IMG/VR virus record: IMGVR_UViG_3300027749_002876
Location: 186,001 to 250,000 of that record
DNA: 64,000 nucleotides
Strand: one strand, 5' to 3'
Under the pieces are notes generated by a model. The model did no database searches and was not told where the DNA came from. It saw nothing but the letters and a program-made list of their open reading frames with translations. Below, piece by piece: positions 5,075-63,628 of this stretch. Each line of letters begins with the position of its first letter. The first letter of the stretch is position 1. The position numbers were made by a program, and so were the translations under genes.

Positions 5075-5884
5075 TTACTTAGATTTAGCACGTATAATGC
5101 TATCAGTTATTTCTTTATCAATTATATCAGGTAAAATAGGTTTTATCAATATGATTTGGTCTCCGTAAATTGATGTAGATTGAATTGGCATACCTTCTTT
5201 GGCTATTTTTAAATGCATATGAGGCTGTGTTCTGGGTGGTACTGTAACCATTAATTTTTTACCAGAAAAAGTAGTGAATTCAATATCTGTTCCTACAATC
5301 AAATCTAATACCGATACAGGTTGTGTGCAGTATAAATCATTTCCTCTTCTTTCAAATTTTAAATGATTTTGAATAATAAATTCAACAATTAATATAGCCT
5401 GAGGAATAACATTCTCATAGCGTACCTGTGACCCGTGATTAACACCTTTGGGAATTTCAATAGTAATTGCATGGTTACCATGAGGTGTTTGTAATTGTAA
5501 ATTTTGACTATCACCATGGTATGCTTGTTCTAATGTAATATTAACCTGTGTCCTAAATGCATGTGGAGTGTTTGGACGTCTAGCATTATGTTGTTGAAAC
5601 ATTTGGCCAAACAAATCGTTTATATCATTATTGAAGTTAAAATTAAATCCACCTCCGCCCCCACCCGGAAATCCGAATGGATTACCTTGCGGCATTGGGT
5701 TATCATATTGTTTTCGTTGATTTGGGTCACTAAGAATGCGATATGCTTCTTCTATCTTTTGAAATGTAGCAGTATCACCACCTTTATCAGGGTGATGTTT
5801 ACCTGCTAGTTTTCTATATGCTTTTTTTATATCGTCTGGTGTAGATTTTTTACCTACACCTAGAATTGAGTAATAGTCTGTCAT
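5075..5884 (-). CDS. dnaJ: DnaJ/CbpA-type (class II) co-chaperone
   Basis: J domain DYYSILGV...HPDKGG, G/F-rich linker, C-terminal domain, no zinc finger. Confidence 0.92.
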   Translation of the reverse strand: MTDYYSILGVGKKSTPDDIKKAYRKLAGKHHPDKGGDTATFQKIEEAYRILSDPNQRKQYDNPMPQGNPFGFPGGGGGGFNFNFNNDINDLFGQMFQQHNARRPNTPHAFRTQVNITLEQAYHGDSQNLQLQTPHGNHAITIEIPKGVNHGSQVRYENVIPQAILIVEFIIQNHLKFERRGNDLYCTQPVSVLDLIVGTDIEFTTFSGKKLMVTVPPRTQPHMHLKIAKEGMPIQSTSIYGDQIILIKPILPDIIDKEITDSIIRAKSK

Positions 5885-5891
5885 AATATCA

Positions 5892-5920
5892 AGTATAACA
5901 CAGTTAGTGTGTTAAGTCAA
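5892..5920 (-). promoter_or_regulatory. sigma70-type promoter TTGACT-N17-TATACT, 7 nt before the dnaJ ATG
   Basis: direct motif match; TG one base upstream of -10; no SD. Confidence 0.75.
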
Positions 5921-7084: not shown

Positions 7085-7711
7085 TTATATTGTTCCCATT
7101 GGAGGAGGTGCATTGGCGTCCATTGGCATATTGCCTGTCATACCGGGCATCTGTTGTTGGTCTTGTCCACCATCTTCACTACCATCACTATCTTCTTCGT
7201 CTAAATCGTCCTCATATGAATTATCTAACTCATTCAAATCAATATTTTGACCAGCTAAATCAATACTACCTTCACGGATATCATCCATGATTTCTTTAGG
7301 CATTTCTATGTAGACTAGCCATACTTGTTTTTTCTGCATTTTTGGATAACGTGTCCCGGGCACATAATCATCAGGATTTTCTACTTCAACCGGAACTTCA
7401 ATCTTAGTTTTTTTCCATTGTATTTTGCAACCTAATTTAACTAAACGTTTAGCCCCACTTGGGTCAGGCATTAGTTTATATGGCCACATGAACATACATC
7501 CCACTGAGTAGCGTTTAACTACCGGGCCTTGAACTAACTCACCTAGCTGCCAGTTTCTGAAGGCATATATATCAGCTTCATCTAAAACACGTTCAAAATC
7601 TAATAATACGGACATAGAACCATTGCTGGTATATATCCCTTTTATGGTGCTAATAATGCTGACATAATCAACATCATCAAAAAAATCGTCGGCGACAGGT
7701 AAAGTACTCAT
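7085..7711 (-). CDS. hypothetical late protein with acidic tail
   Basis: 208-aa ORF; GATAAATA 5 nt upstream of ATG. Confidence 0.7.
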   Translation of the reverse strand: MSTLPVADDFFDDVDYVSIISTIKGIYTSNGSMSVLLDFERVLDEADIYAFRNWQLGELVQGPVVKRYSVGCMFMWPYKLMPDPSGAKRLVKLGCKIQWKKTKIEVPVEVENPDDYVPGTRYPKMQKKQVWLVYIEMPKEIMDDIREGSIDLAGQNIDLNELDNSYEDDLDEEDSDGSEDGGQDQQQMPGMTGNMPMDANAPPPMGTI

Positions 7712-7716
7712 ATATG

Positions 7717-7724
7717 TATTTATC
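7717..7724 (-). promoter_or_regulatory. late promoter GATAAATA, 5 nt before ATG; second copy at 7772-7779
   Basis: T4 TATAAATA-like motif that recurs before many late genes in this window. Confidence 0.75.
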
Positions 7725-10888: not shown

Positions 10889-11395
10889 TTATTTTAAAAA
10901 CTCATCTATTGACAAATCATAGTACAAACTATTTATACGATGTATCTCAAGTAAAAACAATACAAAACTTGCTACACTACTACCTCGACCTACACCCCAA
11001 ACAATATTATGTTTACGCATAGTGTCAACCAAATACTTAAGATACTTTAATAGAATAAACATATCACGGTCTTGGAACTTAATTAACTCTTCACCTGCTC
11101 TTTGTAATTCTGCTTCAGTAGTACACTTGTCTAGTACATACTTAGCAATGTCCATATTTAAATATTCAGGTGGCAAGTGCCAAGATGATTGATTAGTGTT
11201 ATCAAATTCCTCTACTGATACTTTTGGGTCAACATACTCAATAAGTTTGGGTATATTTTCCAATTGCAATACATCATTAAAGTTAATAGCTTTCTCTACA
11301 AAAGCATATTTTATTGTACGTAACGGGTCTTGTAGATATAACAAACACAAGTCTGACTCAGTAAAAATAGATTGACCGTAAATATCTGATTTCAT
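10889..11395 (-). CDS. dnaE: DNA polymerase III alpha (DnaE)-like N-terminal palm fragment (start revised to MKSDIYG)
   Basis: QRAGEELIKF...YLVDTMRKHNIVWGVGRGSSVASFVLFLLEIHRINSL matches the DnaE GPGRGS region. Confidence 0.85.
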   Translation of the reverse strand: MKSDIYGQSIFTESDLCLLYLQDPLRTIKYAFVEKAINFNDVLQLENIPKLIEYVDPKVSVEEFDNTNQSSWHLPPEYLNMDIAKYVLDKCTTEAELQRAGEELIKFQDRDMFILLKYLKYLVDTMRKHNIVWGVGRGSSVASFVLFLLEIHRINSLYYDLSIDEFLK

Positions 11396-11401
11396 GTACC
11401 T

Positions 11402-11430
11402 ATTGTAACACAAAACAGATATGAAAACAA
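11402..11430 (-). promoter_or_regulatory. sigma70-type promoter TTGTTT-N17-TACAAT, 6 nt before ATG
   Basis: motif and spacing; no SD. Confidence 0.65.
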
Positions 11431-22482: not shown

Positions 22483-22968
22483 TCATTTATTATCTGTTTT
22501 TGATGCCGACAACATCTTCAGCAATGCATTACGGTCTAAACTTTTTCCTTCACCTAATGGGGTAGCATTTATTTCTTCTTCTTTACCCGCAGTTTTTTGG
22601 TCTAGTTGTGCTTTTTTAAGCTGTAAATCAAGCATTTTAAGCTTCTTGTTGATTTTGGCTGTCTTTGACGTAATTGCGTGACCTAAAAAACTACTGGCAC
22701 TGTTAAAGATTTCACTAGCAAAACGACTATCAACTTGCATACCTAAGTCCATTAAATCTTTATAGCTATCGGTTGCTAATCTAGCAAGCTCGTCCATTTC
22801 AGTATCGCTTGCTTCTAGTCCTCTAACTTGAGGCAATGCGGCTTCAATTTTATCTAATGCTTCTGCTGTATCAGTTGTGATTTCTTCCATAGTTTCAGGC
22901 AAGGAAATAGTAATACCCCTATCATTATTTTCTGGAAGCTCAAATAAATCTTCTAATTTTTTGGTCAT
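22483..22968 (-). CDS. probable terminase small subunit (gp16-like)
   Basis: helical protein; SRFASEIF and C-terminal LDRNALLKML loosely parallel gp16 patterns; next to gp4; late promoter 4 nt upstream. Confidence 0.5.
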   Translation of the reverse strand: MTKKLEDLFELPENNDRGITISLPETMEEITTDTAEALDKIEAALPQVRGLEASDTEMDELARLATDSYKDLMDLGMQVDSRFASEIFNSASSFLGHAITSKTAKINKKLKMLDLQLKKAQLDQKTAGKEEEINATPLGEGKSLDRNALLKMLSASKTDNK

Positions 22969-22979
22969 ACAGTATTTAT

Positions 22980-29432: not shown

Positions 29433-29780
29433 ATGCTTAGACCTATATGCAAAACATGCGGAAAGAATCACTGTGCTGTGAATTATATCCGTGAGGGTAT
29501 TACACACTATCGCAGTGGATGTGATGAATGTGGACGTAAGAAAAAGAAGTTAAAGCCTAGAAAGGCTAACTGGACTAAGAGTGGTTATAAGAAAAAAGCC
29601 ACATGTGATTTGTGTGGCTTTAAGAGTTTGTTTCCTGCGCAAATGACAGTATATCACATTGACGGTAATTTAGAGAATATTGCTCTTACTAATTTACGAA
29701 CTGTTTGCTTATGCTGTATTGAGGTTGTTAAACGCAAGGAAGTAACTTGGCGTCGAGGTGATTTACAGGTTGACCACTGA
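29433..29780 (+). CDS. Cys-rich zinc-binding HNH-like protein (start revised to MLRPICK)
   Basis: three CxxC pairs plus YHIDGN...NLRTVCLCC; GATAAATA at 29421-29428. Confidence 0.7.
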   Translation: MLRPICKTCGKNHCAVNYIREGITHYRSGCDECGRKKKKLKPRKANWTKSGYKKKATCDLCGFKSLFPAQMTVYHIDGNLENIALTNLRTVCLCCIEVVKRKEVTWRRGDLQVDH

Positions 29781-30404
29781 GTTGACTTGTTTATGCAGTT
29801 CATCTATTGAACCATTGTTGTCGATATAATAATCATATAACAATCCTACACTACTATACTCACTAGCATGAACACTATAGTTACCTAATTCTACCATAGC
29901 TTTTAGTCTTTGTTCGCTACCTTCAGGTTCATTGTTATAGTCTACTGCCGAACTATACCAAACTGGACGTTCACCCCTGCTTACACGCATTGTAATGCCG
30001 CCTACACTTTTAATAGAATTAACTTCATTAACAAAACGACAATCTGTAATAACAATGTTTTCATCAGTCTGGCGTAACTTATTCTCTACACTTGCTACCC
30101 AAATATCAGTATGAAAGTTATTACGACACACTTCTGTTCCCCAGTATTGTAATACCCATCTTGGAGTAATATTCATACCCAATCGTTCACTCCACCATTC
30201 ATCACGTTGTTCGCGCCAAGCTCTACTGGTTTTAGTTGAACCCTCTAGATATTCTCTATTCCAACCAAAGACGGCTGCTACAGCGTCTTTTAAACTTGCC
30301 GCAAAACTAACACGCTTGAACCCGTGAAATGTGCAAAGATAGTCAGCAATCGTATCTTTCCCGCTCGAAATTAGCCCGGTTACACCAATAATTTTATTTT
30401 TCAT
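29763..30404 (-). CDS. deoxynucleoside monophosphate kinase (gp1-like)
   Basis: GLISSGKDT P-loop, SFAASLKD, PRWVLQYWGTE, TDCRF.NE, HASE. Confidence 0.9.
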   Translation of the reverse strand: MKNKIIGVTGLISSGKDTIADYLCTFHGFKRVSFAASLKDAVAAVFGWNREYLEGSTKTSRAWREQRDEWWSERLGMNITPRWVLQYWGTEVCRNNFHTDIWVASVENKLRQTDENIVITDCRFVNEVNSIKSVGGITMRVSRGERPVWYSSAVDYNNEPEGSEQRLKAMVELGNYSVHASEYSSVGLLYDYYIDNNGSIDELHKQVNSVVNL

Positions 30405-30410
30405 AAACTA

Positions 30411-30439
30411 AGTTTATCACATACTAATAGTAAAGTCAA
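30411..30439 (-). promoter_or_regulatory. sigma70-type promoter TTGACT-N17-TAAACT, 6 nt before ATG
   Basis: motif and spacing; no SD. Confidence 0.65.
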
Positions 30440-31272
30440 TTAGTATTTGCCCTATTATAATCCTCAAACAATTCTTCTATTGTTTTGTGACACTTAGCAC
30501 CCTTACTTGAATTTTCTATTTTTGGAATTAATCTTAGATTAGTCCAATGACCAATAACTTCTACAGAGATATTATTTTTGAATCCCTCGCTGATACTATA
30601 AATGTGGTCTAAATGTAATTGATTACTTCTTTCTAATTTATTTGGATTGATATCATAAAAATGTTCATACCAGTTTTTATTAGTAATCAATTTGACAGCG
30701 TTGTAATATTCTTCTACTAGAGTTCTATCTTTGGGATTGAGTGATTGCCATTCTTTGTTTCTATCTGAAAGTTTTTGTTTGATAGTAGGATGTTTGGATG
30801 GATTATCAACTCCGTACTTTTCCATCCAAGTTTTTCTTGCCGCCGCAAGGCTGGCTTTGTAGTCTCTATTGCGTTCATTCCATGGTTTATGATTACCTTC
30901 AATAAATCCAATTGAGAATTTTTTATTTGCTTGCATAGACTTATCGGGATCTTTTTGCCTCCAGTGATTCCCGGTAGTTGCTTTACTAACTATTTCTCCT
31001 ATTGCAGTATTTTTTATAGCTACAGATGAAAATTTGCGATAGGCTTTTTCATTCCATCTTAGAGGTTTTGCAGTAATCGGGCACACCTCAATAGAATATC
31101 GTTCGTTAAGTATATGCCATACTCGTTGTTTTGGTTTAGCATTAGGTGGTAGGAACGATGTAGCCTCTAAAATGTCAGACCATAATTCAGGGTGGGTTTT
31201 ACTCAAATATCTGGTTACAGATTTATTACAACTTGTATCTTCAGCAATAATGGTTGCAAGTATGTTTCTCAT
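30436..31272 (-). mobile_element. free-standing HNH homing endonuclease gene
   Basis: C-terminal HLDHIYS...IGHWTNLRLIPKIENSSKG; EKYGVDNPSK repeat-type motif; lies between gp13 and dNMP kinase. Confidence 0.8.
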
Positions 31273-31310
31273 ACTTGTATTTATGCCTTATCCTTATACT
31301 CATGTAAGAA

Positions 31311-32158: not shown

Positions 32159-33112
32159 TTAGGCGTAACCATACCCTGCGGCGCCTAGATAACTTCTAGC
32201 AGTACCAACTCCTGTGGTATTTGTGGCAACAACACCTGCATTACTTACTAAATTGGTTATTGATGTTGCTGATCCGGTATCTCCATATCCAAATATAGCT
32301 TTATCAGCACCATAAATTGCGGCTGCTAGACCGGTTCTGGCAGTACCAACACCTGTAGTGTCACTGGCAATAGTACCGGTATTACTTACTAGATTAGTTA
32401 TTGCAGTAACTCCAATAGTACCACCATATCCATATCCAAATATAGCTGTATCAGTACCGTAGCCGGTTGCCGCCATATAACCTCTAGCAGTACCAACACA
32501 AGTAGTATTACTAGCAACTACTCCCGTATTGCTTACTAAGTTGATCGTTGACACTTGTGTACCACTGGAATTTTCACCAAATGCAAACATAGCTTTATCT
32601 GTTCCATATCCTACCGCCGCAATTTGATTCCTAGCAGTACCGGAACTCCCTACATCAGTAGCAACTACGCCCGTATTTGACACTAAGTTAGTCATCGATG
32701 CTCGGCTAGAATTATTAATCCATCCAAATCCAAATATAGCTTTATCTGTTCCATAACTTGCGGCTGCTAATCCATTTCTAGCAGTGCCTACACCAGTAGT
32801 ATCTGTAGCAACTACACCAGTATTTGATACTAGATTAGTTACTGCTGTTACAGCCACTGCTGGATAAACTGATCCAACATCACCGTATCCAAATATACCT
32901 TTGTCAGTACCATAAGTAGCGGCGGCTAAACTATTTCTAGCAGTGCCTACACCAGTAGTATCTGTAGCAACTACACCAGTATTTGATACTAGATTGGTCA
33001 TTGATACTAAAGTAGTTGAATAACCATATCCAAATATTGCCTTGCTTGAGGGGGGAGGTTGCTTTGTTACACTTACCCCGGCTCCAAATGAAATTCCTGC
33101 TCCAATATCCAT
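32159..33112 (-). CDS. six-repeat Kelch-like beta-propeller protein, paralog 2
   Basis: 6 x KAIFGYG-[variable]-TNLVSNTGVVATDTTGVGTAR-xx-LAAAGYGTD; own late promoter at 33132-33139 and AAGGA SD. Confidence 0.75.
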   Translation of the reverse strand: MDIGAGISFGAGVSVTKQPPPSSKAIFGYGYSTTLVSMTNLVSNTGVVATDTTGVGTARNSLAAATYGTDKGIFGYGDVGSVYPAVAVTAVTNLVSNTGVVATDTTGVGTARNGLAAASYGTDKAIFGFGWINNSSRASMTNLVSNTGVVATDVGSSGTARNQIAAVGYGTDKAMFAFGENSSGTQVSTINLVSNTGVVASNTTCVGTARGYMAATGYGTDTAIFGYGYGGTIGVTAITNLVSNTGTIASDTTGVGTARTGLAAAIYGADKAIFGYGDTGSATSITNLVSNAGVVATNTTGVGTARSYLGAAGYGYA

Positions 33113-33163: not shown

Positions 33164-34108
33164 TTACACGGAACCATAACTTGCGGATGCGAGCCAACCT
33201 CTGGTAGTACCTACACCTGTAGTATCGGTAGCTACAACTCCTGTGTTTGATACTAGGTTGGTCATTGATAACTTAGTATTGGTAACATTTTGACCATATC
33301 CAAATATAGCCTTATCGGTACCATAACCTGCGGCTGCTAATGAATATCTAGCAGTGCCAACACCGGTAGTATCACTAGCAATAGTACCTGTATTACTTAC
33401 TAGATTAGTTATTGCTGTTACATCCCCGGATACTGTACCAAAACCAAATCCAAAAATAGCTTTATCAGTGCCGTAGCCTGCGGCTGCTAATGCATACCTA
33501 CTAGTACCGACACCTATCACATCATTACCAACTACACCTGTATTTGAAACTAGATTGGTGATTGAGTTTGGACCACCACCTGTTCCATATGAAAAAATAG
33601 CTTTATCAGTACCGTATCCTGCGGCTGCTAACGCATATCTAGCAGTGCCAACACCTGTTACATCATTACCAACTACACCTGTATTTGAAACTAGGTTAGT
33701 TAGTGAATAAGTTGTTGCTCCGATTCCATATCCAAATATAGCTTTATCAGTTCCATAGCCTGCGGCTGCTAACGAATATCTAGCAGTGCCAACACCCGTA
33801 GTATCTGTAGCAACTACACCTGCATTTGATACTAGATTGGTCACCGATACTGCCGCAAATGACCCATCTCGCCCAAATCCAAATATAGCTTTATCAGTAC
33901 CATAACCTGCGGCTGCAAGTTGTTGTCTAGCAGTGCCAACACCCGTAGTATCTGTAGCAACTACACCTGTGTTTGATACTAAGTTAGTTATCGAAATTTG
34001 TGTACCGGAATTATTAGTACCATATCCAAAAATTGCTTTATATGAGGGTGGGGGTTGTGGAGTTACACTTACTCCACCGCCAAATGAAATTCCTGCTCCA
34101 ATATCCAT
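33164..34108 (-). CDS. six-repeat Kelch-like beta-propeller protein, paralog 1
   Basis: same six-repeat architecture; own late promoter at 34128-34135. Confidence 0.75.
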   Translation of the reverse strand: MDIGAGISFGGGVSVTPQPPPSYKAIFGYGTNNSGTQISITNLVSNTGVVATDTTGVGTARQQLAAAGYGTDKAIFGFGRDGSFAAVSVTNLVSNAGVVATDTTGVGTARYSLAAAGYGTDKAIFGYGIGATTYSLTNLVSNTGVVGNDVTGVGTARYALAAAGYGTDKAIFSYGTGGGPNSITNLVSNTGVVGNDVIGVGTSRYALAAAGYGTDKAIFGFGFGTVSGDVTAITNLVSNTGTIASDTTGVGTARYSLAAAGYGTDKAIFGYGQNVTNTKLSMTNLVSNTGVVATDTTGVGTTRGWLASASYGSV

Positions 34109-34583: not shown

Positions 34584-35749
34584 TAAAATGCTTTCAGTAT
34601 AATCATGTTCTCATTAAAGCGTCCATTGGGTGCTGTAGCAACTGCTTTAATATCTTTAAAATACTTACGTGCCGCAGGCTTACTACCCATTACTTCTTTA
34701 ATCTGCTCAGCCGGTTTACGTAATGTCTTAACTTCACTTTGTGCGGTATCAAATCCGAGCAATGTATTACCTTTAACAGTAAATGCTTTACTGTAATCAT
34801 CAGCAATGTAATGATGTAACTTACGTTTTGCACTATCATAAATCCAAGCCTCACTAGCTCCATGTAATTTGATCGGACTAATGCTTGCCAAATCAAGTTT
34901 GCTTGCAGTATCTTTAAATACTTTTTGATATTTCAATTTAGCTACAATTTTCTCAACAGGCACAGCTTTACGTGCCCTAGGAGCTTTAGCGGCTTTCTTA
35001 ACACTAATGTAACTGTTCAAATCATTGATAACCAATTCAATGAACTTAACAATGTTCTTAACTTGCGTTTTAGTTAAATGGTCGTAACCTTGCACTAGTT
35101 GTGCATCGGTACCTTTGAGTAACTCCTCAAACTCATTTTGTTTCTTTTTCCATACTTCAGTTAAAATACTGATATGTTGTGGCATCACATTCTTTTTAGC
35201 GACTTCATCCATAGGACGTAGTGTGTGCTTTGTAGGTGCACCAGATGTAATGAACTCATCAAACAATCCTTCAAGTTCACCACCAGCTTCACGTGCTTTG
35301 TCACGCAAAATTTCCTGAATGTTGGGTCGTGATGGTGCCTCAACTTCAACTTTTTCTTCTTCCGGTTTGTGTACTAACTTTAGCAAACGATTGATTTCGT
35401 TTTCAAGTGTTAGTTCCTCATGCTCGGTTAATGATAGTCCACGCAATTGCATACGTGCTAACCAGCACAATGTTAGTAAGAATTCATTTTCATGTATCTT
35501 ACGCATAATCTTAGCATCAGTAGGACGTTTATTGTATTCCAAATATTGGGACAATAATTCTTTAGCGTCTTTCTTACCATAAAAACGATGATACCAAGTA
35601 AAACTACGCATCAATGCGACTCTACGTTTATCCTCATCTGGTTGTAGTACAAATAAGGGTTCATCCCCATAATGTTGTACATCTGCATCCCGAGGATTCA
35701 ATGCTTTAACTAGACTATGGTCCTCTGTATTACGCTTACGTGTTGCCAT
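34583..35749 (-). CDS. hypothetical early protein (start revised to MATRKR)
   Basis: AGGAG SD and a consensus sigma70 promoter upstream; C-terminal KTLRKP...NGRFNE. Confidence 0.75.
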   Translation of the reverse strand: MATRKRNTEDHSLVKALNPRDADVQHYGDEPLFVLQPDEDKRRVALMRSFTWYHRFYGKKDAKELLSQYLEYNKRPTDAKIMRKIHENEFLLTLCWLARMQLRGLSLTEHEELTLENEINRLLKLVHKPEEEKVEVEAPSRPNIQEILRDKAREAGGELEGLFDEFITSGAPTKHTLRPMDEVAKKNVMPQHISILTEVWKKKQNEFEELLKGTDAQLVQGYDHLTKTQVKNIVKFIELVINDLNSYISVKKAAKAPRARKAVPVEKIVAKLKYQKVFKDTASKLDLASISPIKLHGASEAWIYDSAKRKLHHYIADDYSKAFTVKGNTLLGFDTAQSEVKTLRKPAEQIKEVMGSKPAARKYFKDIKAVATAPNGRFNENMIILKAF

Positions 35750-35776
35750 TAGGCACTCCTTTGTATTGATTTTATT

Positions 35777-35805
35777 ATTATAACATAACCCATATTTATT
35801 GTCAA
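35777..35805 (-). promoter_or_regulatory. consensus sigma70 promoter TTGACA-N17-TATAAT
   Basis: exact consensus; divergent from the + strand late promoter at 35833-35840. Confidence 0.85.
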
Positions 35806-35845
35806 CCTTAGGATTCAAGCGTAGGACATTGCGATAAATACTATT

Positions 35846-37540
35846 ATGCCAAAACTGTCACTATACCGCCCAAATAAACAAAATGATTATCGTTTCTTCG
35901 ATAGGACAATATCCGAAGAATTACGTGTTGGCGGCACGGATTTATACATTCACAAGTATTTAGGTCCAACTAATCAAGGACCTAGTATTGATTATACTCA
36001 ACCAGAATATGATAGTTTAAATCCTACTAATATTCAGGATCTATTATTCCTAGAGAATAGAGATAGAACATACGATCCAAACATTTATAGATTACGTGGT
36101 CACTATAATGTACAGAATTTAGACTTTGATTTAAGTCAATTTGGTTTATTTTTAAATAACGATATTATCTTTATCAATGTACATTATAATGATATGATTG
36201 ATATTGTTGGTCGCAAGTTAATGGTGGGTGATGTATTAGAATTACCTCACTTATTAGATTATAATCCATTAAAAGAAACTATCCCAGTAGCATTAAAAAG
36301 ATTTTATAGTATTACTGATGCTAACTTTTCCAGTGAAGGATTTAGTCAAACATGGTATCCACATATGTGGCGTATTAAATGTGAACCATTAGTTGACAGT
36401 GAAGAATTTAGTCAAATATTAGCTGAACCAATTAACCAAGATAACTATTTAGGATTATGGGATAAAGATAAAACATATCCACCGGGTTATGTTATTACAT
36501 TTGGTGATAAGAATTATGTCAGTAAAATAGAAGTACCTATTGGCATTATGCCACCAAATCCAACATATTGGGAGTTAGATACGGCATCAAATCTTAAAGA
36601 TATTCTCGCTACTTATAATAAGAATATTGCAATTAATAATGCGGCATTGGAAGAGGCTAAACGTCTTGTACCTAAATCAGGATATGATAATAATAATTTA
36701 TATATTGTGCCTACATATGGTGTATTTGAAACTGATACACAATTATCAGGTAAATATAATCAACCTGCACCACCTGTTAATGTTATAATATCAAACTTTG
36801 GTCCGCCTACTGCTACTGTACAAATGATGCGTTCTTCACAATATAGAAACGCTAGCCCAGTATTACGTATACCTGCTAATTCAGTAAAAACAATTTGGGA
36901 TATGACACATGAAGGCGGTGCAATAGAACCTAGTGCAACGTTGTCATTACGATCAATGACCATTAAACCTACATTAACTGACACTGGTTCAGGTGCAGTA
37001 TCAGGTGATATTGTATTGACACTTGATAGTATTGGCGTCATTACAGGACCATATGGTACAGCAGATAATACATATGCAACGGCTGACCAGAATCCAGAAT
37101 TACCAGGATTTACCGATGAGATAACACCAGACATGGACTTTAGAGCAGATTGTGATCCACGATTCCAATTCATTGCACGTAGTAGTCCAAGAAGTTTTGG
37201 ATATACAACAGGTTACTTAGATGGTACAGGTGAAGCTCCAAATGGATTCCCAACAGGTGCTGGCATTAGTTTCCCGCAAAATCCTCAAGTAGGAGATTAT
37301 TTCTTACGTATAGATTATTTGCCACAATTACTATATCGTTGGGATGGTCAATTGTGGATAAGAATTTCACAAAATGTAAGAACAGATACCGGTATGACTA
37401 CAGGAGATTTGTCACAACAATCTAGCTTCATAAATAATAGCAATGTAACAGTATTAACTGATGGCACAACTACTACACAGAAACAGGCATTGAGTACAAT
37501 ACTTACAATTGCACCAGACACGATACCACCACAACCTTAA
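35846..37540 (+). CDS. neck/head-closure protein (gp14-like) with extensions
   Basis: upstream of gp15; LSQFGLFL..D and GDVLELP pattern; WDKDKTYPPGYVI...PPNPTYW insert; GATAAATA 5 nt before ATG. Confidence 0.65.
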   Translation: MPKLSLYRPNKQNDYRFFDRTISEELRVGGTDLYIHKYLGPTNQGPSIDYTQPEYDSLNPTNIQDLLFLENRDRTYDPNIYRLRGHYNVQNLDFDLSQFGLFLNNDIIFINVHYNDMIDIVGRKLMVGDVLELPHLLDYNPLKETIPVALKRFYSITDANFSSEGFSQTWYPHMWRIKCEPLVDSEEFSQILAEPINQDNYLGLWDKDKTYPPGYVITFGDKNYVSKIEVPIGIMPPNPTYWELDTASNLKDILATYNKNIAINNAALEEAKRLVPKSGYDNNNLYIVPTYGVFETDTQLSGKYNQPAPPVNVIISNFGPPTATVQMMRSSQYRNASPVLRIPANSVKTIWDMTHEGGAIEPSATLSLRSMTIKPTLTDTGSGAVSGDIVLTLDSIGVITGPYGTADNTYATADQNPELPGFTDEITPDMDFRADCDPRFQFIARSSPRSFGYTTGYLDGTGEAPNGFPTGAGISFPQNPQVGDYFLRIDYLPQLLYRWDGQLWIRISQNVRTDTGMTTGDLSQQSSFINNSNVTVLTDGTTTTQKQALSTILTIAPDTIPPQP

Positions 37541-44700: not shown

Positions 44701-45387
44701 TTATAAGAACTTCATGTAATATTGTTCAACACGACTGAACCAAATGTCAGTGTATTTGTCAAATTCAGTACCTTCTAGGATGAATTCCTGATATAGATTG
44801 TCAGCAGAACACATGAAAATGACACCCTTACGTATCTTTGTACCGTGTACTTCATTGTGGGCATTTGCATAAGCGGCTAATTGAACAAAGTAATCATCAA
44901 TCCACTCACGTTTTTTAGGCTTGTTTGTTTGCTTGTGATCCATAATAGATTCACTACCATCATGAATACCTGCTAAGTCTGTCGTCCCTGCATAAATCTT
45001 CGGATAATACAACGGAACTTCTGTACCCCAATATTCACTGCATTTAACAAGACCTTGATTAATGATTGATTGGGCCATCTGATGGCTTTGCAAGCTATAC
45101 GGATTGCTTCCGGGCTCATTGAGTACTCCTGTCTTAATATAATCTTCTAGCCACTTGTGCATTCGTGTACCACGACCTGCGGCTTCTGTTGTGATTTCTT
45201 GTGCTTTTTGAACGCCAACTCGTTTACGCCAATTATTAAGTGCTTGTTTAGATTCTTCACTTTTAGTAGCATCTAGTATTGTAGTAACACTGGGAAGTTT
45301 CTCACCATCGGGTGTAGCGTATTTGCGTGACCCGTTTATTGTTTCTCTAAGTAAAGGAACATAATTATATTTGTTTGGAATGTACAT
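44701..45387 (-). CDS. PD-(D/E)XK exonuclease
   Basis: LPSVTTIL, RGTRMH, AGTTD...IMDHKQ, QLAAYA. Confidence 0.88.
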   Translation of the reverse strand: MYIPNKYNYVPLLRETINGSRKYATPDGEKLPSVTTILDATKSEESKQALNNWRKRVGVQKAQEITTEAAGRGTRMHKWLEDYIKTGVLNEPGSNPYSLQSHQMAQSIINQGLVKCSEYWGTEVPLYYPKIYAGTTDLAGIHDGSESIMDHKQTNKPKKREWIDDYFVQLAAYANAHNEVHGTKIRKGVIFMCSADNLYQEFILEGTEFDKYTDIWFSRVEQYYMKFL

Positions 45388-45393
45388 TAGACT

Positions 45394-45422
45394 ATTATAA
45401 TATATTTTATAATTTAATGCAA
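45394..45422 (-). promoter_or_regulatory. sigma70-type promoter TTGCAT-N17-TATAAT, 6 nt before ATG
   Basis: motif and spacing; no SD. Confidence 0.7.
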
Positions 45423-47332: not shown

Positions 47333-47783
47333 TGTTTACCACCTTAAAGTAAATGTTTCGTAATTCGTCAGATGTATCTAAAAATCCAGGAAGTTTAGAC
47401 CATGCTGTGTCAGTTTTAATCATAGGAACACTATCACAATCTGAATACAATGATCCTAATTCTGTTATCCCATCATCAAATACACTAGGATGCTGTATCT
47501 CAAAATCAAATGTCCAACATATATATTCTTCATTATCATGTTGTTCAAACAAGAATCCAAAATTATCAAACTCATCAAATTTAATGTTTATTTGTTTAGG
47601 ATAATTTAGTATCTCGGGTTGACTACGTAATGATATAGCCTGTAATATAGTATCAAAATTACATTGTGTGTTACGTTTATGTAACCAAATGTTTTCATCC
47701 TCATCAAGTGCAGGTTTATTCCTGTTAACAGTACCAGTCTGTGTAATATCAAATAACGTATAACAACTTAATGTGAAACTCAT
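47322..47783 (-). CDS. hypothetical late protein (start revised to MSFTLS)
   Basis: CTAAATA 5 nt before ATG. Confidence 0.7.
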   Translation of the reverse strand: MSFTLSCYTLFDITQTGTVNRNKPALDEDENIWLHKRNTQCNFDTILQAISLRSQPEILNYPKQINIKFDEFDNFGFLFEQHDNEEYICWTFDFEIQHPSVFDDGITELGSLYSDCDSVPMIKTDTAWSKLPGFLDTSDELRNIYFKVVNNES

Positions 47784-47799
47784 ACATGTATTTAGAGGC

Positions 47800-47829
47800 A
47801 AAAAAAATCCGAGAATAAATCTCGGATTT
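47800..47829 (-). terminator. intrinsic terminator
   Basis: AAATCCGAGA / TCTCGGATTT with T-run on the minus strand. Confidence 0.85.
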
Positions 47830-47849
47830 CTTTGAAGTTAAACTTCTAA

Positions 47850-52720: not shown

Positions 52721-53675
52721 TTTTTTTCCTTTGTAGTTCTATTTTGATTTTGCTTGCCGTTGCACTACTCAATATACTGAGCAATGTAGGCAACTTACCA
52801 TACTTAACTACCGCGTCATTCACATCTTTAACATCATCTTCCCAATTGGGAATACTAATACTATAACCTAATTCTAATGCTCTATCACATGTTTCTAAAC
52901 CAGTTTCATCTCTATCGGGAATAAAAATAATTTGTTTATTTAATTGTGCTAGTAATTGTACTTGAGTATCATTGATTGTATTATGTGTTAACGCACAAGC
53001 ATTTAAACTTAATGCATCAAAAATACCTTCAACTAACAAACATACTTCCCAATTAGGTTTCTGAAAGTCATAACCAAATACATAGCCAGGTTGTTGCTCG
53101 TTAATATATTTTGGGATTTTGTTATCTAAGAATCTACTTGTATGACCTACAATTTTGTTCTTGTAAGTATAGGGGATAATAATTCTGTTTGACTGTCTGC
53201 CAGTGTCATTAGGTGTAACTAAGAACGGGTAGTCATTATAATTTATCAGTCTTGCAGACAAGTAATCAACGTATACTTTGTGTAATGGATTACTTACATC
53301 TAATATTTCAGCTTCAGGGAGTTTATGTTCTTCAAATTTTATTTTTGTTTTTTGTTTCTTAAGATGAGCAAAATCTAACAGATCCCTATATTGCAGACTT
53401 TCTAAACTCCATCGTTGAATTTGAATATCATCTATACCACACCATTTTAATAAACTTTTAGTAATCTCACTAATTTGTTTACCTAAGGTGAACCCACATT
53501 TAAACCCACAATTGAAACAGGCATATGACCAGTTTTCTCCGTCTTTTTTAACACCACCTCTACCTCTAGTGTCAGATTTGTGCCCACGATGATGACAGCA
53601 TATAGCATTAAAGCTATGCCATCCACCTTGTGTTATTTTTTTCTTTCCGGGAATTACTGACAGTATATCAAACAT
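52698..53675 (-). CDS. gp61: DNA primase (gp61-like)
   Basis: N-terminal zinc ribbon (CC...CFNC), RIIIP, TOPRIM EGIFD, DRDETG, KDVND. Confidence 0.88.
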   Translation of the reverse strand: MFDILSVIPGKKKITQGGWHSFNAICCHHRGHKSDTRGRGGVKKDGENWSYACFNCGFKCGFTLGKQISEITKSLLKWCGIDDIQIQRWSLESLQYRDLLDFAHLKKQKTKIKFEEHKLPEAEILDVSNPLHKVYVDYLSARLINYNDYPFLVTPNDTGRQSNRIIIPYTYKNKIVGHTSRFLDNKIPKYINEQQPGYVFGYDFQKPNWEVCLLVEGIFDALSLNACALTHNTINDTQVQLLAQLNKQIIFIPDRDETGLETCDRALELGYSISIPNWEDDVKDVNDAVVKYGKLPTLLSILSSATASKIKIELQRKKIEKRLRK

Positions 53676-53681
53676 CTATGT

Positions 53682-53710
53682 AGTATAACATATCTGTCAC
53701 AGATAAACAA
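53682..53710 (-). promoter_or_regulatory. sigma70-type promoter TTGTTT-N17-TATACT, 6 nt before the primase ATG
   Basis: motif and spacing; spacer contains the inverted repeat TATCTGT-C-ACAGATA (53691-53705). Confidence 0.65.
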
Positions 53711-53723
53711 CAGTTTAGGTTGA

Positions 53724-54491
53724 TTATCTTGACAAAATATTGGTTACTGCCCCGTTATTACTTTCAAATTGCATTCTAATATACGGGTGATAACCTTGAA
53801 CCACGTATCCTATTGTATCAGTTTCAGCAGTATAAGTATCGGTTAATATGGGATACCAATCACCGTCTACAATAGTAGAACCTTCAATAACAATATTGCC
53901 ATAGAAGTCACTATATTGTGCTTGTAGTGTTAATATAGGACTATCATTTGTATCTATAACACTGGTATAATATGTTAGGTCACTATCACTATTACCTTCA
54001 GGGTTAGTATTTGGGAATACTTGTCCAGTAGGAATACTGATTGGCATTGAAGGAATAAAGCTAGGTAATACACTGTTAACAATATTCATATCGCCGCGGG
54101 CACCTGCATTGCTATCAACAAATACAGGATAGTCAAACTCTCCTACAGGAATTTCTAATGAGTAATAACATTTTTGTGCGTCAATACCTGCAAGGTCTGC
54201 TGGATTTAAAAATAATGCGGCAATACCGGTTGCAGGTAATTGTAGTGTTAATGCTTTTTGTAATAGGACCACGTTACCTTCATAATTGATAATTCTACAG
54301 GTTATTGATTTACCAGTAATATCTACGGGTTTTTGTTCTTGGTTTAAGAACTGAAACTGAATCTGGTTGTCTACACCCTTATTAAGAGTTAGAGGTTTGG
54401 CATACTGAGGCATATAGCTCCTTGGGGAAAATCCTGTTAAAAGTATAACGATTTGTCTTTGTGTATAGACGAAAACTTGAGTTGAGTACAT
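53724..54491 (-). CDS. virion structural protein (start revised to MYSTQV)
   Basis: GATAAATA 5 nt before ATG; beta-rich; KGVDN.IQFQFLNQEQKPVD. Confidence 0.6.
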   Translation of the reverse strand: MYSTQVFVYTQRQIVILLTGFSPRSYMPQYAKPLTLNKGVDNQIQFQFLNQEQKPVDITGKSITCRIINYEGNVVLLQKALTLQLPATGIAALFLNPADLAGIDAQKCYYSLEIPVGEFDYPVFVDSNAGARGDMNIVNSVLPSFIPSMPISIPTGQVFPNTNPEGNSDSDLTYYTSVIDTNDSPILTLQAQYSDFYGNIVIEGSTIVDGDWYPILTDTYTAETDTIGYVVQGYHPYIRMQFESNNGAVTNILSR

Positions 54492-54558
54492 AATGATATT
54501 TATCAAAATATATTGCCAGGCATTCCTGTGATAAATATTTCGGTCAATAATTATAATA

Positions 54559-58770: not shown

Positions 58771-59267
58771 AAAGCCTGACTATAATCCACAATCTCACAG
58801 TTACGACTAATTTCTTTTACAAAGTAAACACATCTAGGCTTAGGACCATCATCTAATGGTACACACAAAAATTGTCCGTTCTTTAATCGAGGTGCATACC
58901 ATGTTACATCGTGATATATATCTACAATCTCAATTGAAACAAAACTTGGACTAAAACTAGTTAGTGGATTAAACTCAAACGCATTGAACCCTCTATCATT
59001 GATACTTGTTAACGGTAATGTTTCTAAGTCCCCGTGTTCTTGTTCACCAATTAGTATTTGCCAATCAATAGGCATCTTAATAGTGCTATCACCAATCTTT
59101 AATACAAGTGCAGGACTATTAAATGATTCTAAAAAGATAAGTGGTATGTAATGATAGTCTACGTTTTGTGGATTACTATTGTCTAGTATGGCAAATCGAA
59201 GGTCATCAATTTCGTCCGGGAGTGTTTCTAAGTTATAGAATTCGTTTTCTAGTGTGAGTATACGCAT
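58767..59267 (-). CDS. hypothetical beta-rich protein, possibly a degenerate Hint fold
   Basis: 166 aa; own consensus promoter. Confidence 0.65.
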   Translation of the reverse strand: MRILTLENEFYNLETLPDEIDDLRFAILDNSNPQNVDYHYIPLIFLESFNSPALVLKIGDSTIKMPIDWQILIGEQEHGDLETLPLTSINDRGFNAFEFNPLTSFSPSFVSIEIVDIYHDVTWYAPRLKNGQFLCVPLDDGPKPRCVYFVKEISRNCEIVDYSQAF

Positions 59268-59273
59268 TTTGTT

Positions 59274-59302
59274 ATTATAACACTTTCTTATCTGTATGTC
59301 AA
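59274..59302 (-). promoter_or_regulatory. consensus sigma70 promoter TTGACA-N17-TATAAT, 6 nt before ATG
   Basis: exact consensus; no SD. Confidence 0.85.
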
Positions 59303-61824: not shown

Positions 61825-62853
61825 TTACACAGACTTCATACATGTAGTACGTGCAAGATTCTTCCAGTTGCCGGGGCTAATCTTTACTAAGTCAGCAATC
61901 TTCAAGCACATACGCAAGGACACTTCACGCAATTTCGTATGATTGTCCCACATAAAGTCAATCACAATTTGTGATTGTTCTTCATTAAAATCATAGTCTT
62001 TGAACAAACCACCATCAGCATCACGATGGACCTGCTTGATACGCAACATCTTATCACGATCACCATCAATAGTCAGGTCCAGAAAGTGACAACGTGATTG
62101 CAATGCTTCTAAGTGATCCTGTAATTTCTTAGACTTCAAGTTGCCGAATTTCAAGTTAGTGATAAAGATAGCACTACCATTGAAGTTGAAAGTATTCGGG
62201 ATACCTTCTTCACGCAACAAACGTGAATCACTGTTCCAGCAAATTCTACGTGTCTTACCTGAATCAAGTGCGGCCTTCAAAATGTTCAAACTCAAGTCAT
62301 CAGTAAAAACACTATCACAATCATCAAAAATTAACACATTCTTTGTGTCAGAATATTTGTACAGTTGACTATACAAACCCAATGCTGTCATCGCACCTTT
62401 CACAATTTGAAAGCGAACTTTCTTACCTGCAAGCTTGTCAAACATACTTGCTTTTTCCATTTGTGTCTCAACACCATAACTTTTGCCGACACCGGGCGGG
62501 CCTGAAACAATCATAGCACGGATATCACCATTGATACAAGCACGTGACATTTCATCAAGGACCTCGAAACGAGTAGCAATACGGTCCATTGCTTCTGTTT
62601 CAGTTTCTTTCACAACTTCTTTTGCAAATTTTACTGTATTTTCTATCACATTATCTCCATTCAAAAATTCAATTTGATTAATATTATCAACAAGTACCTT
62701 AACTGCAGGGATATTGATTGCGAATTGACCGTCATTTTTTACAGTCACATAACTACCTTTTTTACTTGTCTGAAAACCCTTGACTAGTGTAAACTCAGTA
62801 TTGACTACTGCTTGTTTACGATAAGAGCCAGAGAGAATGCGAATAGTAGACAT
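61825..62853 (-). CDS. AAA+ family ATPase
   Basis: SGPPGVGKS, LIFDDCD, FITN, ALQSRC. Confidence 0.85.
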   Translation of the reverse strand: MSTIRILSGSYRKQAVVNTEFTLVKGFQTSKKGSYVTVKNDGQFAINIPAVKVLVDNINQIEFLNGDNVIENTVKFAKEVVKETETEAMDRIATRFEVLDEMSRACINGDIRAMIVSGPPGVGKSYGVETQMEKASMFDKLAGKKVRFQIVKGAMTALGLYSQLYKYSDTKNVLIFDDCDSVFTDDLSLNILKAALDSGKTRRICWNSDSRLLREEGIPNTFNFNGSAIFITNLKFGNLKSKKLQDHLEALQSRCHFLDLTIDGDRDKMLRIKQVHRDADGGLFKDYDFNEEQSQIVIDFMWDNHTKLREVSLRMCLKIADLVKISPGNWKNLARTTCMKSV

Positions 62854-62884
62854 TTGTTTCCTTTATTTCAGTGTCAATACAAGT

Positions 62885-62913
62885 ATTGTATCACGTTATC
62901 CATTTATTGTCAA
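62885..62913 (-). promoter_or_regulatory. early sigma70 promoter TTGACA-N17-TACAAT
   Basis: shares AAATTTGACAATAAATGG with the next two promoters. Confidence 0.85.
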
Positions 62914-62923
62914 ATTTTGTGCC

Positions 62924-63301
62924 TTATGCGGCCTTACGAAAATACATATAAGGCAAGCCCAATGTATAGCACAAGTACTCATCATCGCTTTGAGTATCCT
63001 CAGCTTCGTGGATCCAGCGCATTGCTGTTGTACGGTCCTTAGCACCAGCATCAACCAATGACTGAATCCGTTGCTCAAAAACAACAGTTGCAGTAGCTTC
63101 TGCCTCTTTGCGGGCCTTATCTTCGGCTTCAATAGCTACACCAAGTCCTTCAAACTCAGCTTCAAACTGTTCCAAAGTCCAAGTTGAAGTGTCAACACCG
63201 CGAGGGCGAACACCGTAAGCGTCCTTGTACATATCCCAGTAAAGTTCCCGGGCTTGTTCCAATTGTGTCAACTCTTCCCAAGATTTAAATTCTGTAGTCA
63301 T
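62924..63301 (-). CDS. hypothetical early protein
   Basis: YWDMYKDAYGVRPRG; GAGGA SD; own promoter. Confidence 0.8.
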   Translation of the reverse strand: MTTEFKSWEELTQLEQARELYWDMYKDAYGVRPRGVDTSTWTLEQFEAEFEGLGVAIEAEDKARKEAEATATVVFEQRIQSLVDAGAKDRTTAMRWIHEAEDTQSDDEYLCYTLGLPYMYFRKAA

Positions 63302-63334
63302 TTTGTAGTCCTCTTCTTTACTGTCTAAGATTCT

Positions 63335-63363
63335 ATTATAGCAGAAAGCCCATTTATTGTCAA
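63335..63363 (-). promoter_or_regulatory. early sigma70 promoter TTGACA-N17-TATAAT
   Basis: exact consensus with extended TG. Confidence 0.9.
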
Positions 63364-63572
63364 ATTTTGGCTATCAAACTAGCATGAATTTCATTCATTT
63401 CCGACTGTTCTACGTAGAAATCGGACCTAGGATCATAGTACTGGCCTTCACTGTTGTCATAATACAACACTCTTCCGGAGAAATTGAACGGGCCTTCTAG
63501 TCCGTTTCTAGGACCATATTTGGTACGCATTTCATCCATCTGATACTTGTCAGCAACAACACGATATCCCAT
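63360..63572 (-). CDS. hypothetical early protein
   Basis: GLEGPF...LYYD..EGQYYDP; own promoter and SD. Confidence 0.8.
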   Translation of the reverse strand: MGYRVVADKYQMDEMRTKYGPRNGLEGPFNFSGRVLYYDNSEGQYYDPRSDFYVEQSEMNEIHASLIAKI

Positions 63573-63599
63573 AAATCCCTTTCAACTGAATAAGACTCT

Positions 63600-63628
63600 A
63601 TTATATAGCCAAATCCATTTATTGTCAA
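63600..63628 (-). promoter_or_regulatory. early sigma70 promoter TTGACA-N17-TATAAT
   Basis: exact consensus. Confidence 0.9.

What the first reader, a model, noticed from the sequence alone, without database searches (positions are those of the whole stretch)
5882..5920. Host-polymerase promoters placed 6-7 nt before start codons with no SD
Six sigma70-type promoters with exact 17-bp spacers end 6-7 nt before an ATG: dnaJ (5884), the DnaE N-fragment (11395), dNMP kinase (30404), exonuclease (45387), primase (53675) and 59267. Transcription normally starts about 6-7 nt after the -10 box, so these mRNAs should begin at or next to the AUG. The promoters at 35.8 kb and 62.9-63.6 kb instead give SD-led mRNAs. 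Inference: a leaderless class enriched for replication and nucleotide genes.
Basis: partly seen in the sequence, partly recalled or inferred. Interest (0 to 1): 0.6.

Follow-up and report, generated by a model that had tools for sequence, protein, structure and literature searches.

The report
Promoters butted against start codons
In this huge uncultured phage about one gene in nine has its promoter placed so that the message should begin exactly at the AUG, a layout kept across related phages but not yet confirmed by RNA data.

Summary
All six sites have a TTGnnn box, an exact 17-bp spacer and a TAnnnT box. The ATG follows after 6 nt at five sites and after 7 nt at one, and none has a Shine-Dalgarno (SD) sequence. 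This is not chance. In the 524-kb contig that contains the window, the distance from the -10 box to the start codon has a sharp spike at 6 nt (14 sites at 5-7 nt against about 1.2 expected). It has a second, broad mode at 26-34 nt, which is the SD-led class.

Four related uncultured phages give the same histogram. Two cultured relatives, PA5oct and E. coli phage A4, show no spike. At the primase gene the layout holds in all 38 distinct relatives, down to 36% protein identity, while the 6-nt gap itself varies freely.

The sigma70-type leaderless set is enriched in replication and nucleotide genes (8 of 12 against 2 of 25). However, a second and larger leaderless set sits behind T4-type late promoters (ATAAATA, 4-5 nt before the ATG) and includes terminase and virion genes.

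No RNA data could be found, so the transcription start sites remain inferred.

The parts
5882..5920 (-). Promoter plus start codon of the DnaJ gene (5075-5884). -35 TTGACT at 5920-5915, 17-bp spacer ending TGt, -10 TATACT at 5897-5892, 7 nt, ATG at 5884-5882.
   Evidence: PWM score 14.5. The Pfam J domain starts at residue 3. Orthologs in G004, G003 and G002 keep TTGACA-17-TAnnnT-6 nt-ATG.
11393..11430 (-). Promoter plus start codon of the DnaE N-terminal fragment (10889-11395). TTGTTT, 17 bp ending TGt, TACAAT, 6 nt, ATG.
   Evidence: PWM score 9.7. PF07733 and phrog_11127 matches. Orthologs in G004 and G003 have the same layout, with N-termini aligned from residue 1.
30402..30439 (-). Promoter plus start codon of the dNMP kinase gene (29763-30404). 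TTGACT, 17 bp ending TGa, TAAACT, 6 nt, ATG.
   Evidence: PWM score 13.2. PF21448 match. The match to the P-loop NTPase family AAA_18 begins at residue 6, so the start cannot lie downstream. Orthologs toggle: leaderless in G002, but a promoter plus a leader of about 22 nt with SD in G004, G003 and G005.
45385..45422 (-). Promoter plus start codon of the exonuclease gene (44701-45387). TTGCAT, 17 bp, TATAAT, 6 nt, ATG. This is the weakest site: no TGn, and the -35 box matches 3 of 6.
   Evidence: PWM score 9.0. phrog_298 match from residue 6. G002 has TTGACA-17-TAACAT-6-ATG and G004 has TTTACA-16-TATAAT-6-ATG.
53673..53710 (-). Promoter plus start codon of the primase gene (52698-53675). TTGTTT, 17 bp ending TGt, TATACT, 6 nt, ATG. 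The primase is the first cistron; the DnaB-like helicase gene (51278-52720) follows with an SD.
   Evidence: Among 38 distinct upstream sequences of orthologs (100% down to 36% protein identity), 36 have the -10 box 6 nt before the start and 2 have it at 5 nt. All 38 have TTG at a 16-18 bp spacer and 28 have TGn. There are 28 different 6-nt gaps.
59265..59302 (-). Promoter plus start codon of a 166-aa gene of unknown function (58767-59267). TTGACA, 17 bp ending TGt, TATAAT (12 of 12 consensus positions), 6 nt, ATG. The stop codon of the upstream helicase gene lies inside the spacer.
   Evidence: phrog_11279 aligns from residue 1. Nearly all of the 45 distinct upstream sequences of close relatives keep a TAnnnT -10 box 5-6 nt before the ATG (one locus, L131, does not), and most keep TTGACA/TTGACT at the 17-bp position. 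In PA5oct the ortholog has a promoter with a 27-nt SD leader instead.
7709..7723 (-). Late-type leaderless layout: ATAAATA, 5 nt, ATG of a 208-aa gene (7085-7711).
   Evidence: Orthologs in G004, G003 and G002 keep a 5-nt gap.
22966..22979 (-). Late-type leaderless layout: ATAAATA, 4 nt, ATG of a 161-aa gene (22483-22968).
   Evidence: Orthologs in three relatives keep the late motif 5 nt before the ATG.
31270..31284 (-). Late-type leaderless layout: ATAAATA, 5 nt, ATG of a 278-aa gene (30436-31272).
35834..35848 (+). Late-type leaderless layout on the plus strand: ATAAATA, 5 nt, ATG of a 564-aa virion structural protein gene (35846-37540).
   Evidence: (phrog_11591). G004 and G002 keep the layout, while G003 is SD-led.
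47781..47794 (-). Late-type leaderless layout with the variant motif TAAATA: 5 nt, then the ATG at 47783 of a 153-aa gene. A terminator-like hairpin with a T run lies directly upstream.
   Evidence: Orthologs in G004 and G003 have the same layout.
54489..54503 (-). Late-type leaderless layout: ATAAATA, 5 nt, ATG at 54491 of a 255-aa gene. The ORF list shows an upstream TTG at 54506, which lies inside the motif.
   Evidence: The G004 ortholog keeps the layout.
35749..35805 (-). Comparator, an SD-led early-type promoter: TTGACA-17-TATAAT, a 27-nt leader with AAGGAG, ATG at 35749.
62853..63628 (-). Comparator, three SD-led early-type promoters of a stereotyped cassette. The -35 boxes start at 62913, 63363 and 63628. 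Leaders are 31, 33 and 27 nt with AGGA-type SDs. The ATGs are at 62853, 63301 and 63572.

Best explanation
The six sites are working promoters read by the host RNA polymerase. They are placed so that transcription starts on the A of the ATG, which gives leaderless first cistrons. A ribosome would have to bind the 5'-terminal AUG directly, because there is no room for an SD sequence. Downstream cistrons of the same operons use SD sequences or translational coupling.

The same design is used with a second promoter type. This is the T4-like late promoter ATAAATA, which is presumably read with the phage's gp55-like sigma factor. Together the two types cover about 39 of 347 called genes in this phage.

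Shown here: the sequence layout, its excess over chance, the absence of SD, the correctness of the start codons, conservation of the spacing among relatives, and a less folded 5' coding end. Inferred: the transcription start point and the mode of ribosome binding.
For: - **Spacing matches the canonical +1 for both promoter types.** The sigma70 -10 box spans -12 to -7, so 6 nt should separate it from +1; the observed mode is 6. The T4 late motif spans -13 to -6 (PMC1524935), so 5 nt are expected; the observed mode is 5, with 11 sites at 4 nt and 18 at 5 nt.
- **The distance distributions are bimodal with an empty gap.** The sigma70 type has nothing at 8-11 nt and then a second mode at 26-34 nt. 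The late type has a second mode at 16-27 nt.
- **SD sequences are missing.** None of 14 sigma70-type sites and 2 of 39 late-type sites pair at -4 kcal/mol or better. The figures are 55% for other genes and 17% for random ATGs.
- **The start codons are right.** The J domain starts at residue 3, phrog_11279 aligns from residue 1, the dNMP kinase's P-loop NTPase family match (AAA_18) begins at residue 6, and ortholog N-termini align.
- **The layout is conserved.** All five clade genomes show the same two spikes. Orthologs keep their class: 22 of 41 for the sigma70 type and 50 of 65 for the late type, while only 6 of 337 SD genes switch to it. The 6-nt gap carries no information.
- **dNMP kinase orthologs switch between the two designs.** They are either leaderless, or have a promoter with a leader and an SD.
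- **The pipeline is specific.** The same pipeline finds no spike in PA5oct or E. coli phage A4.
- **The 5' coding end is less folded.** Bases +1 to +40 fold with a mean of -1.7 kcal/mol against -2.9 kcal/mol for SD-led genes (p = 3e-12).
- **Some units are insulated.** In several cases a terminator runs straight into the promoter and then the ATG.
- **A late sigma factor is present.** A gp55-like gene was found (phrog_12791, E = 1e-72).
Against: - No transcript 5' ends are available. No RNA run was listed, and the metagenome scan returned only the phage's own contig.
- Three of the six -35 boxes match the consensus only in TTG, and a generic promoter scan does not list the sites at 45387 and 53675.
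- Many of these promoters overlap the 3' end of the upstream gene. Some conservation could therefore come from coding constraint, and read-through transcripts must also carry these ATGs internally.
- The host is unknown, so its ability to translate leaderless mRNA is untested.
- Cultured relatives do not use the layout.
Confidence: 0.75

Rival explanations
1. The promoter-like elements are real internal promoters, but the genes next to them are translated mainly from longer read-through transcripts. Initiation would be SD-independent, through the A/U-rich unstructured upstream sequence. The tight spacing would only reflect genome compaction.
For: Upstream gaps are short, 2-52 nt at most sigma70-type sites, and promoters often overlap the upstream gene's end. 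Terminators upstream are not clearly more frequent at these sites: 15-18% against 9-12%.
Against: Compaction does not explain why the distance is fixed at exactly 6 nt for the sigma70 type and 4-5 nt for the late type, with an empty gap up to the SD-led mode. It also does not explain why orthologs with a longer leader regain an SD. Several units are insulated by a terminator that abuts the promoter.
Confidence: 0.1
2. Transcription starts a few bases away from the A. The messages would then carry a 1-4 nt leader, or would start inside the ATG so that translation begins at a downstream codon.
For: Start-site choice can wander by one or two bases. Gaps of 5, 7 and 8 nt, and of 4 nt for the late type, also occur.
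Against: A start inside or beyond the ATG would remove conserved N-terminal residues such as the J domain and the P-loop. A 1-4 nt leader is still functionally leaderless. The position is A in 39 of 40 sites, which is the preferred initiating base.
Confidence: 0.08
3. The sigma70-like leaderless sites form a phage-controlled middle class that needs a phage activator or a modified sigma factor, rather than plain host-sigma70 promoters. This is compatible with leaderless output.
For: Their -35 boxes are weaker than those of the stereotyped early cassette, and they precede DNA-synthesis genes. The related phage CBB has a separate promoter class with a divergent -35 box before its DNA-synthesis genes (PMC5259590).
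Against: The -35 consensus is still TTGaca at 17 bp, and no distinct activator box emerged from 40 aligned sites. No activator gene was identified.
Confidence: 0.25
4. The sites are chance matches in A/T-rich DNA, or the start codons are mis-called.
For: At a loose threshold, promoter-like matches are no more frequent than in shuffled sequence: 94 against 83 +/- 7.7.
Against: The distance histogram, the control strands, the shifted-start controls and two low-GC control genomes all exclude chance. Domain and ortholog alignments fix the start codons.
Confidence: 0.02

Closest known systems
Leaderless genes with a -10 box next to the ORF in Deinococcus-Thermus (PMC12340547)
   Same: A TAnnnT -10 box lies a few bp before the start codon, there is no SD, the spacing to the ORF is specific, and a -35 box is an optional enhancer.
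   Different: That case is a chromosomal habit of a bacterial phylum. Here it is a phage clade. This clade also keeps a full TTG -35 box at 17 bp with TGn, uses SD on most other genes, and applies the same design to a second promoter type.
Thermus phage phiYS40 middle and late leaderless transcripts (Sevostyanova et al. 2007, cited in PMC4842269)
   Same: A large myovirus that uses host RNA polymerase. Leaderless phage genes lie behind extended -10 (TGnTA) promoters. The other details come from my own recollection, because the paper is not held.
   Different: The host phylum is different and known to favour leaderless mRNA. There is no T4-type late motif. The phage is unrelated to the group here (Rak2, PA5oct and Atu_ph07 relatives).
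T4-type late promoters (TATAAATA, gp55) and the three promoter classes of Rak2-like jumbo phages such as CBB (PMC1524935, PMC5259590)
   Same: An ATAAATA motif lies before late and structural genes. A gp55-like sigma gene is present. RpoD-like early promoters precede small ORFs, and a separate class precedes DNA-synthesis genes.
   Different: Those phages are described with SD-led messages. With my pipeline, PA5oct and E. coli phage A4 show only the 20-35 nt mode. Here about 40% of gene-proximal late motifs sit 4-8 nt before the ATG.
Lambda cI from PRM, and mycobacterial leaderless transcripts (PMC4633059; lambda from my own knowledge)
   Same: The 5'-terminal AUG is the only initiation signal.
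   Different: Lambda has a single regulatory gene of this kind. The mycobacterial case is a host-wide trait in a high-GC phylum.

Membership tests
Leaderless mRNA genes | The transcript 5' end lies at, or within a few nt of, the start codon. | not testable with these tools
   No RNA run was listed. The metagenome scan found only the phage's own contig.
Leaderless mRNA genes | [quoted passage not shown] | tested here: met
Leaderless mRNA genes | There is no Shine-Dalgarno sequence before the start codon. | tested here: met
   None of 14 sigma70-type sites and 2 of 39 late-type sites pair at -4 kcal/mol or better, against 55% of other genes.
Leaderless mRNA genes | AUG is the 5'-terminal codon and the true N-terminus of the protein. 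| tested here: met
   All six window sites start at an ATG. Because starts were defined in the analysis as each gene's first ATG, the ATG tally is not an independent test. In the primase relatives, where GTG was also allowed, 35 of 38 distinct sequences have ATG and three loci have GTG. N-termini are supported by domain and ortholog alignments.
Sigma70-type (housekeeping) promoters | A TTGACA-like -35 box, a 17 +/- 1 bp spacer, a TATAAT-like -10 box and an optional TGn. | tested here: met
   All six have 17-bp spacers, five have TGn, and the -35 box matches 3-6 of 6 positions. Activity was not tested.
T4-type late promoters | A TATAAATA-like motif at -13 to -6, oriented with the genes. | tested here: met
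   In the 91-kb record there are 35 copies on the coding strand against 5 on the other. In the full contig 131 of 209 copies lie in the 9.4% of sequence that is intergenic.
T4-type late promoters | A phage gp55-like sigma factor. | tested here: met
   phrog_12791 at E = 1e-72 and phrog_234 at E = 2e-20, at G001:341198-342100.
T4-type late promoters | The gp33 co-activator and coupling to the sliding clamp. | not tested
   Neither was searched for. The CBB paper reports no gp33 or gp45 homologs in that relative.

The most novel reading that the evidence does not exclude
This clade of huge phages uses leaderless initiation as a takeover device. Its middle and late messages would bypass the SD pathway and out-compete host and early-phage messages once the phage has altered the initiation machinery. 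The phage carries its own IF1 and bS21 genes, and it would be the first case of gp55-type late promoters that make leaderless mRNAs.
Probability: 0.15. Interest if true: 0.8.

Novelty: new variant of a known kind. Interest (0 to 1): 0.55.

Why it matters
If the start sites are confirmed, roughly a tenth of the genes of a 350-kb phage would be translated without any leader. This would hold in two temporal classes and behind two different promoter types, including terminase and virion genes.

- It would show that leaderless expression can be a lineage-wide viral strategy outside the phyla where it is usual.
- It would give a simple rule for calling starts and operon heads in such genomes. Gene callers that rely on SD will misplace these starts.
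- It would offer natural matched pairs, because orthologs toggle between leaderless and SD-led forms. These pairs could be used to study what each mode costs or buys.
- It could also hint at the unknown host's translation habits.

Tried and rejected
- **RNA evidence.** The look-up of sequencing runs listed no RNA run. One exact-pattern scan of the metagenome contigs returned only the phage's own contig.
- **Near-identical cultured phage.** Megablast found none, and tblastn with a 462-aa highly expressed protein found none.
- **Link to translation genes.** IF1 and bS21 genes are present in the clade. However, bS21 is also in PA5oct, Atu_ph07 and Phosso, and IF1 is also in Phosso; these phages lack the leaderless enrichment. 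There is therefore no specific co-occurrence. IF3, S1 and RegB homologs were not found; the RegB search had no positive control.
- **Host inference from IF1.** The best matches were Arcobacteraceae at 64% identity, from a search biased by word patterns. This is not informative, and the host stays unknown.
- **Terminators upstream.** They are not clearly more frequent than at other genes. Only individual clean examples are used in the argument.
- **Generic promoter scan.** There is no overall excess over shuffled sequence. The signal lies in the distance to the start codon, not in the number of matches.

Full report
**What the window is.** Almost all genes lie on the minus strand and GC is about 36%. 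The window is part of a 91-kb IMG/VR virus record. That record is 100% identical to positions 177099-268420 of a 524,565-bp contig, G001. Proteins include DnaJ, a DnaE fragment, a dNMP kinase, a PD-(D/E)XK exonuclease, a Toprim primase, a DnaB-like helicase, a UvsW-like helicase, a clamp-loader-like ATPase, a tail sheath and virion proteins. The nearest cultured relatives are the jumbo myoviruses Atu_ph07, PA5oct, Phosso, SCTP-2 and the Rak2/GAP32 group, at 33-52% protein identity. PA5oct depends on the host RNA polymerase (PMC7318152).

**The observation.** All six sites are as described. Each has TTGnnn, exactly 17 bp, TAnnnT, then 6 nt (7 nt at 5884) and the ATG. Five have TGn before the -10 box. 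The -35 boxes range from a perfect TTGACA at 59267 to TTG only at 11395, 45387 and 53675. A generic scan lists only the site at 59267 among the three in its range, and finds no overall excess of promoter-like matches (94 against 83 +/- 7.7). The signal is therefore in the placement, not in the number of matches.

**Is the placement more than chance?** On the coding strand of the 91-kb record, the pattern TTG-N17-TGnTAnnnT-N(d)-ATG occurs 1, 4 and 2 times at d = 5, 6 and 7. It never occurs at any other d from 0 to 15, and the three control strands show no peak (no hits on either reversed strand; single hits at d = 12 and 13 on the opposite strand). I then called genes on G001 and scored every position with a sigma70 weight matrix. 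The distance from the -10 box to the first ATG of each gene gives 1, 12 and 1 sites at d = 5, 6 and 7, nothing at 8-11, and a broad second mode at 26-34 nt. Controls with shifted starts give 0.3-0.6 per bin (Poisson p = 3e-11).

**A second, larger leaderless set.** Reading the upstream regions revealed the motif ATAAATA before many genes. In the 91-kb record it occurs 35 times on the coding strand and 5 times on the other. In G001, 131 of 209 copies lie in the 9.4% of the sequence that is intergenic. Its distance to the ATG is also bimodal. There are 11, 18, 4, 4 and 2 sites at 4, 5, 6, 7 and 8 nt, and then about 52 sites at 16-27 nt that have an SD.

The T4 late promoter TATAAATA spans -13 to -6 (PMC1524935), which leaves 5 nt before +1. 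The sigma70 -10 box spans -12 to -7, which leaves 6 nt. The two observed modes, 5 and 6, are exactly the values that put the A of ATG at +1 for each promoter type. The phage encodes a gp55-like late sigma factor.

Six late-type sites lie in the window, at 7711, 22968, 31272, 35846 (plus strand), 47783 and 54491. Genes behind such sites include the large terminase and a virion protein.

**Are the starts right, and is there no SD?**
- The J domain begins at residue 3.
- phrog_11279 aligns from residue 1.
- The dNMP kinase's match to the P-loop NTPase family AAA_18 begins at residue 6.
- Orthologs align from their first residues.
- Predicted SD pairing reaches -4 kcal/mol at none of 14 sigma70-type sites and at 2 of 39 late-type sites. 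It does so at 55% of other genes and at 17% of random ATGs.
- The first 40 nt of these ORFs fold less than those of other genes, -1.7 against -2.9 kcal/mol (p = 3e-12).

**Comparative evidence.**
- Primase orthologs were fetched from 78 viral contigs. Among 38 distinct upstream sequences, from 100% down to 36% protein identity, 36 have the -10 box 6 nt before the start and 2 have it 5 nt before. All have TTG at a 16-18 bp spacer and 28 have TGn. The 6-nt gap takes 28 different sequences.
- The 166-aa gene shows the same pattern in 45 distinct close relatives.
- Four more genomes of the clade (G002-G005, 188-352 kb) give the same two spikes.
- Orthologs keep their class. 22 of 41 sigma70-type orthologs do, and most of the remainder are sub-threshold versions of the same layout. 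50 of 65 late-type orthologs do. Only 6 of 337 orthologs of SD genes are leaderless-type.
- The dNMP kinase toggles. It is leaderless in G001 and G002, but has a promoter plus a leader of about 22 nt with GGAG in G003-G005.
- Run through the same pipeline, PA5oct and E. coli phage A4 show only the long-leader modes. Pattern counts in Atu_ph07 and Phosso are at control level.

**Function of the classes.** SD-led sigma70 promoters form a stereotyped early cassette before small ORFs of unknown function. In the genome that holds the window, 8 of 12 sigma70-type leaderless genes act on DNA or nucleotides. These are the DnaE fragment, the dNMP kinase, two exonucleases, the primase, thymidylate synthase, a deoxyribonucleotidase and a GIY-YIG-like protein. 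Only 2 of 25 SD-led genes do so (p = 4e-4). This resembles the early, DNA-synthesis and late promoter classes reported for the relative CBB (PMC5259590). The papers I could search on this phage group do not mention leaderless messages.

**Mechanism.**
- *Shown:* the layout, its excess over chance, its conservation and the absence of SD.
- *Inferred:* RNA polymerase starts on the A, the mRNA begins with AUG, and a ribosome binds the terminal AUG directly. Later cistrons, such as the helicase gene after the primase gene, use an SD or coupling.
- *Open:* why the phage does this. Candidates are compaction, independence from the SD pathway, or temporal control. The phage's IF1 and bS21 genes looked like a lead, but both also occur in relatives without the layout.

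**Limits.**
- No RNA data were available.
- The host is unknown.
- My gene calls are a simple codon-bias heuristic.
- G001 appears to be a mis-join of two related phages. Counts for the window's own genome are therefore given separately: 347 genes, 12 of the sigma70 type and 27 of the late type.

Noticed in passing
G001 contig (window = G001:186001-250000); repeats at G001:172924-177012 and 520477-524565: The 524-kb contig looks like a mis-join of two related phages. A 4,089-bp direct repeat at 99.6% identity reaches the contig end and frames a genome of about 347.6 kb that holds the window. Positions 1-172923 mirror 437-511 kb in inverted order at 74-88% identity.
   Followed up: partly
G001:448302-448514 (-) and G001:471943-472095 (-), outside the window: The phage encodes translation initiation factor IF1 (PF01176, E about 1e-22) and ribosomal protein bS21 (PF01165, E about 1e-15). 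Both also occur in some cultured relatives that lack the leaderless layout.
   Followed up: yes
G001:341198-342100 (+), outside the window: A gp55-like late sigma factor gene (phrog_12791, E = 1e-72) sits behind an SD-led sigma70-type promoter.
   Followed up: partly
window 62853-63628 (-) and about 20 further copies in G001: The early promoters are a repeated cassette with a conserved -35 flank (TTGACAataaatgg) and a conserved 5' leader (agaatcttagacagtaaagaaaAGGA). They precede small ORFs of 55-160 aa.
   Followed up: partly
window 32159-33112 and 33164-34108 (-): Two tandem paralogous genes (317 and 314 aa) have identical upstream regions, with a late motif and SD, and identical first codons.
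   Followed up: no
L026, L030, L059 (primase loci of relatives): Three relatives have GTG instead of ATG at the leaderless position, 6 nt after TATAAT. This is unusual if leaderless initiation needs AUG.
   Followed up: no
window 10889-11395 (-): The DnaE-like polymerase appears split. This 168-aa ORF covers only the start of the Pfam DNA_pol3_alpha domain (profile positions 20-94 of 260). The other pieces were not traced.
   Followed up: no
window 47790-47830 (-); G001 genes 147, 196, 284, 295, 305: Several units consist of a terminator hairpin with a T run that abuts the promoter, which in turn abuts the ATG. Examples include the terminase and thymidylate synthase genes.
   Followed up: partly
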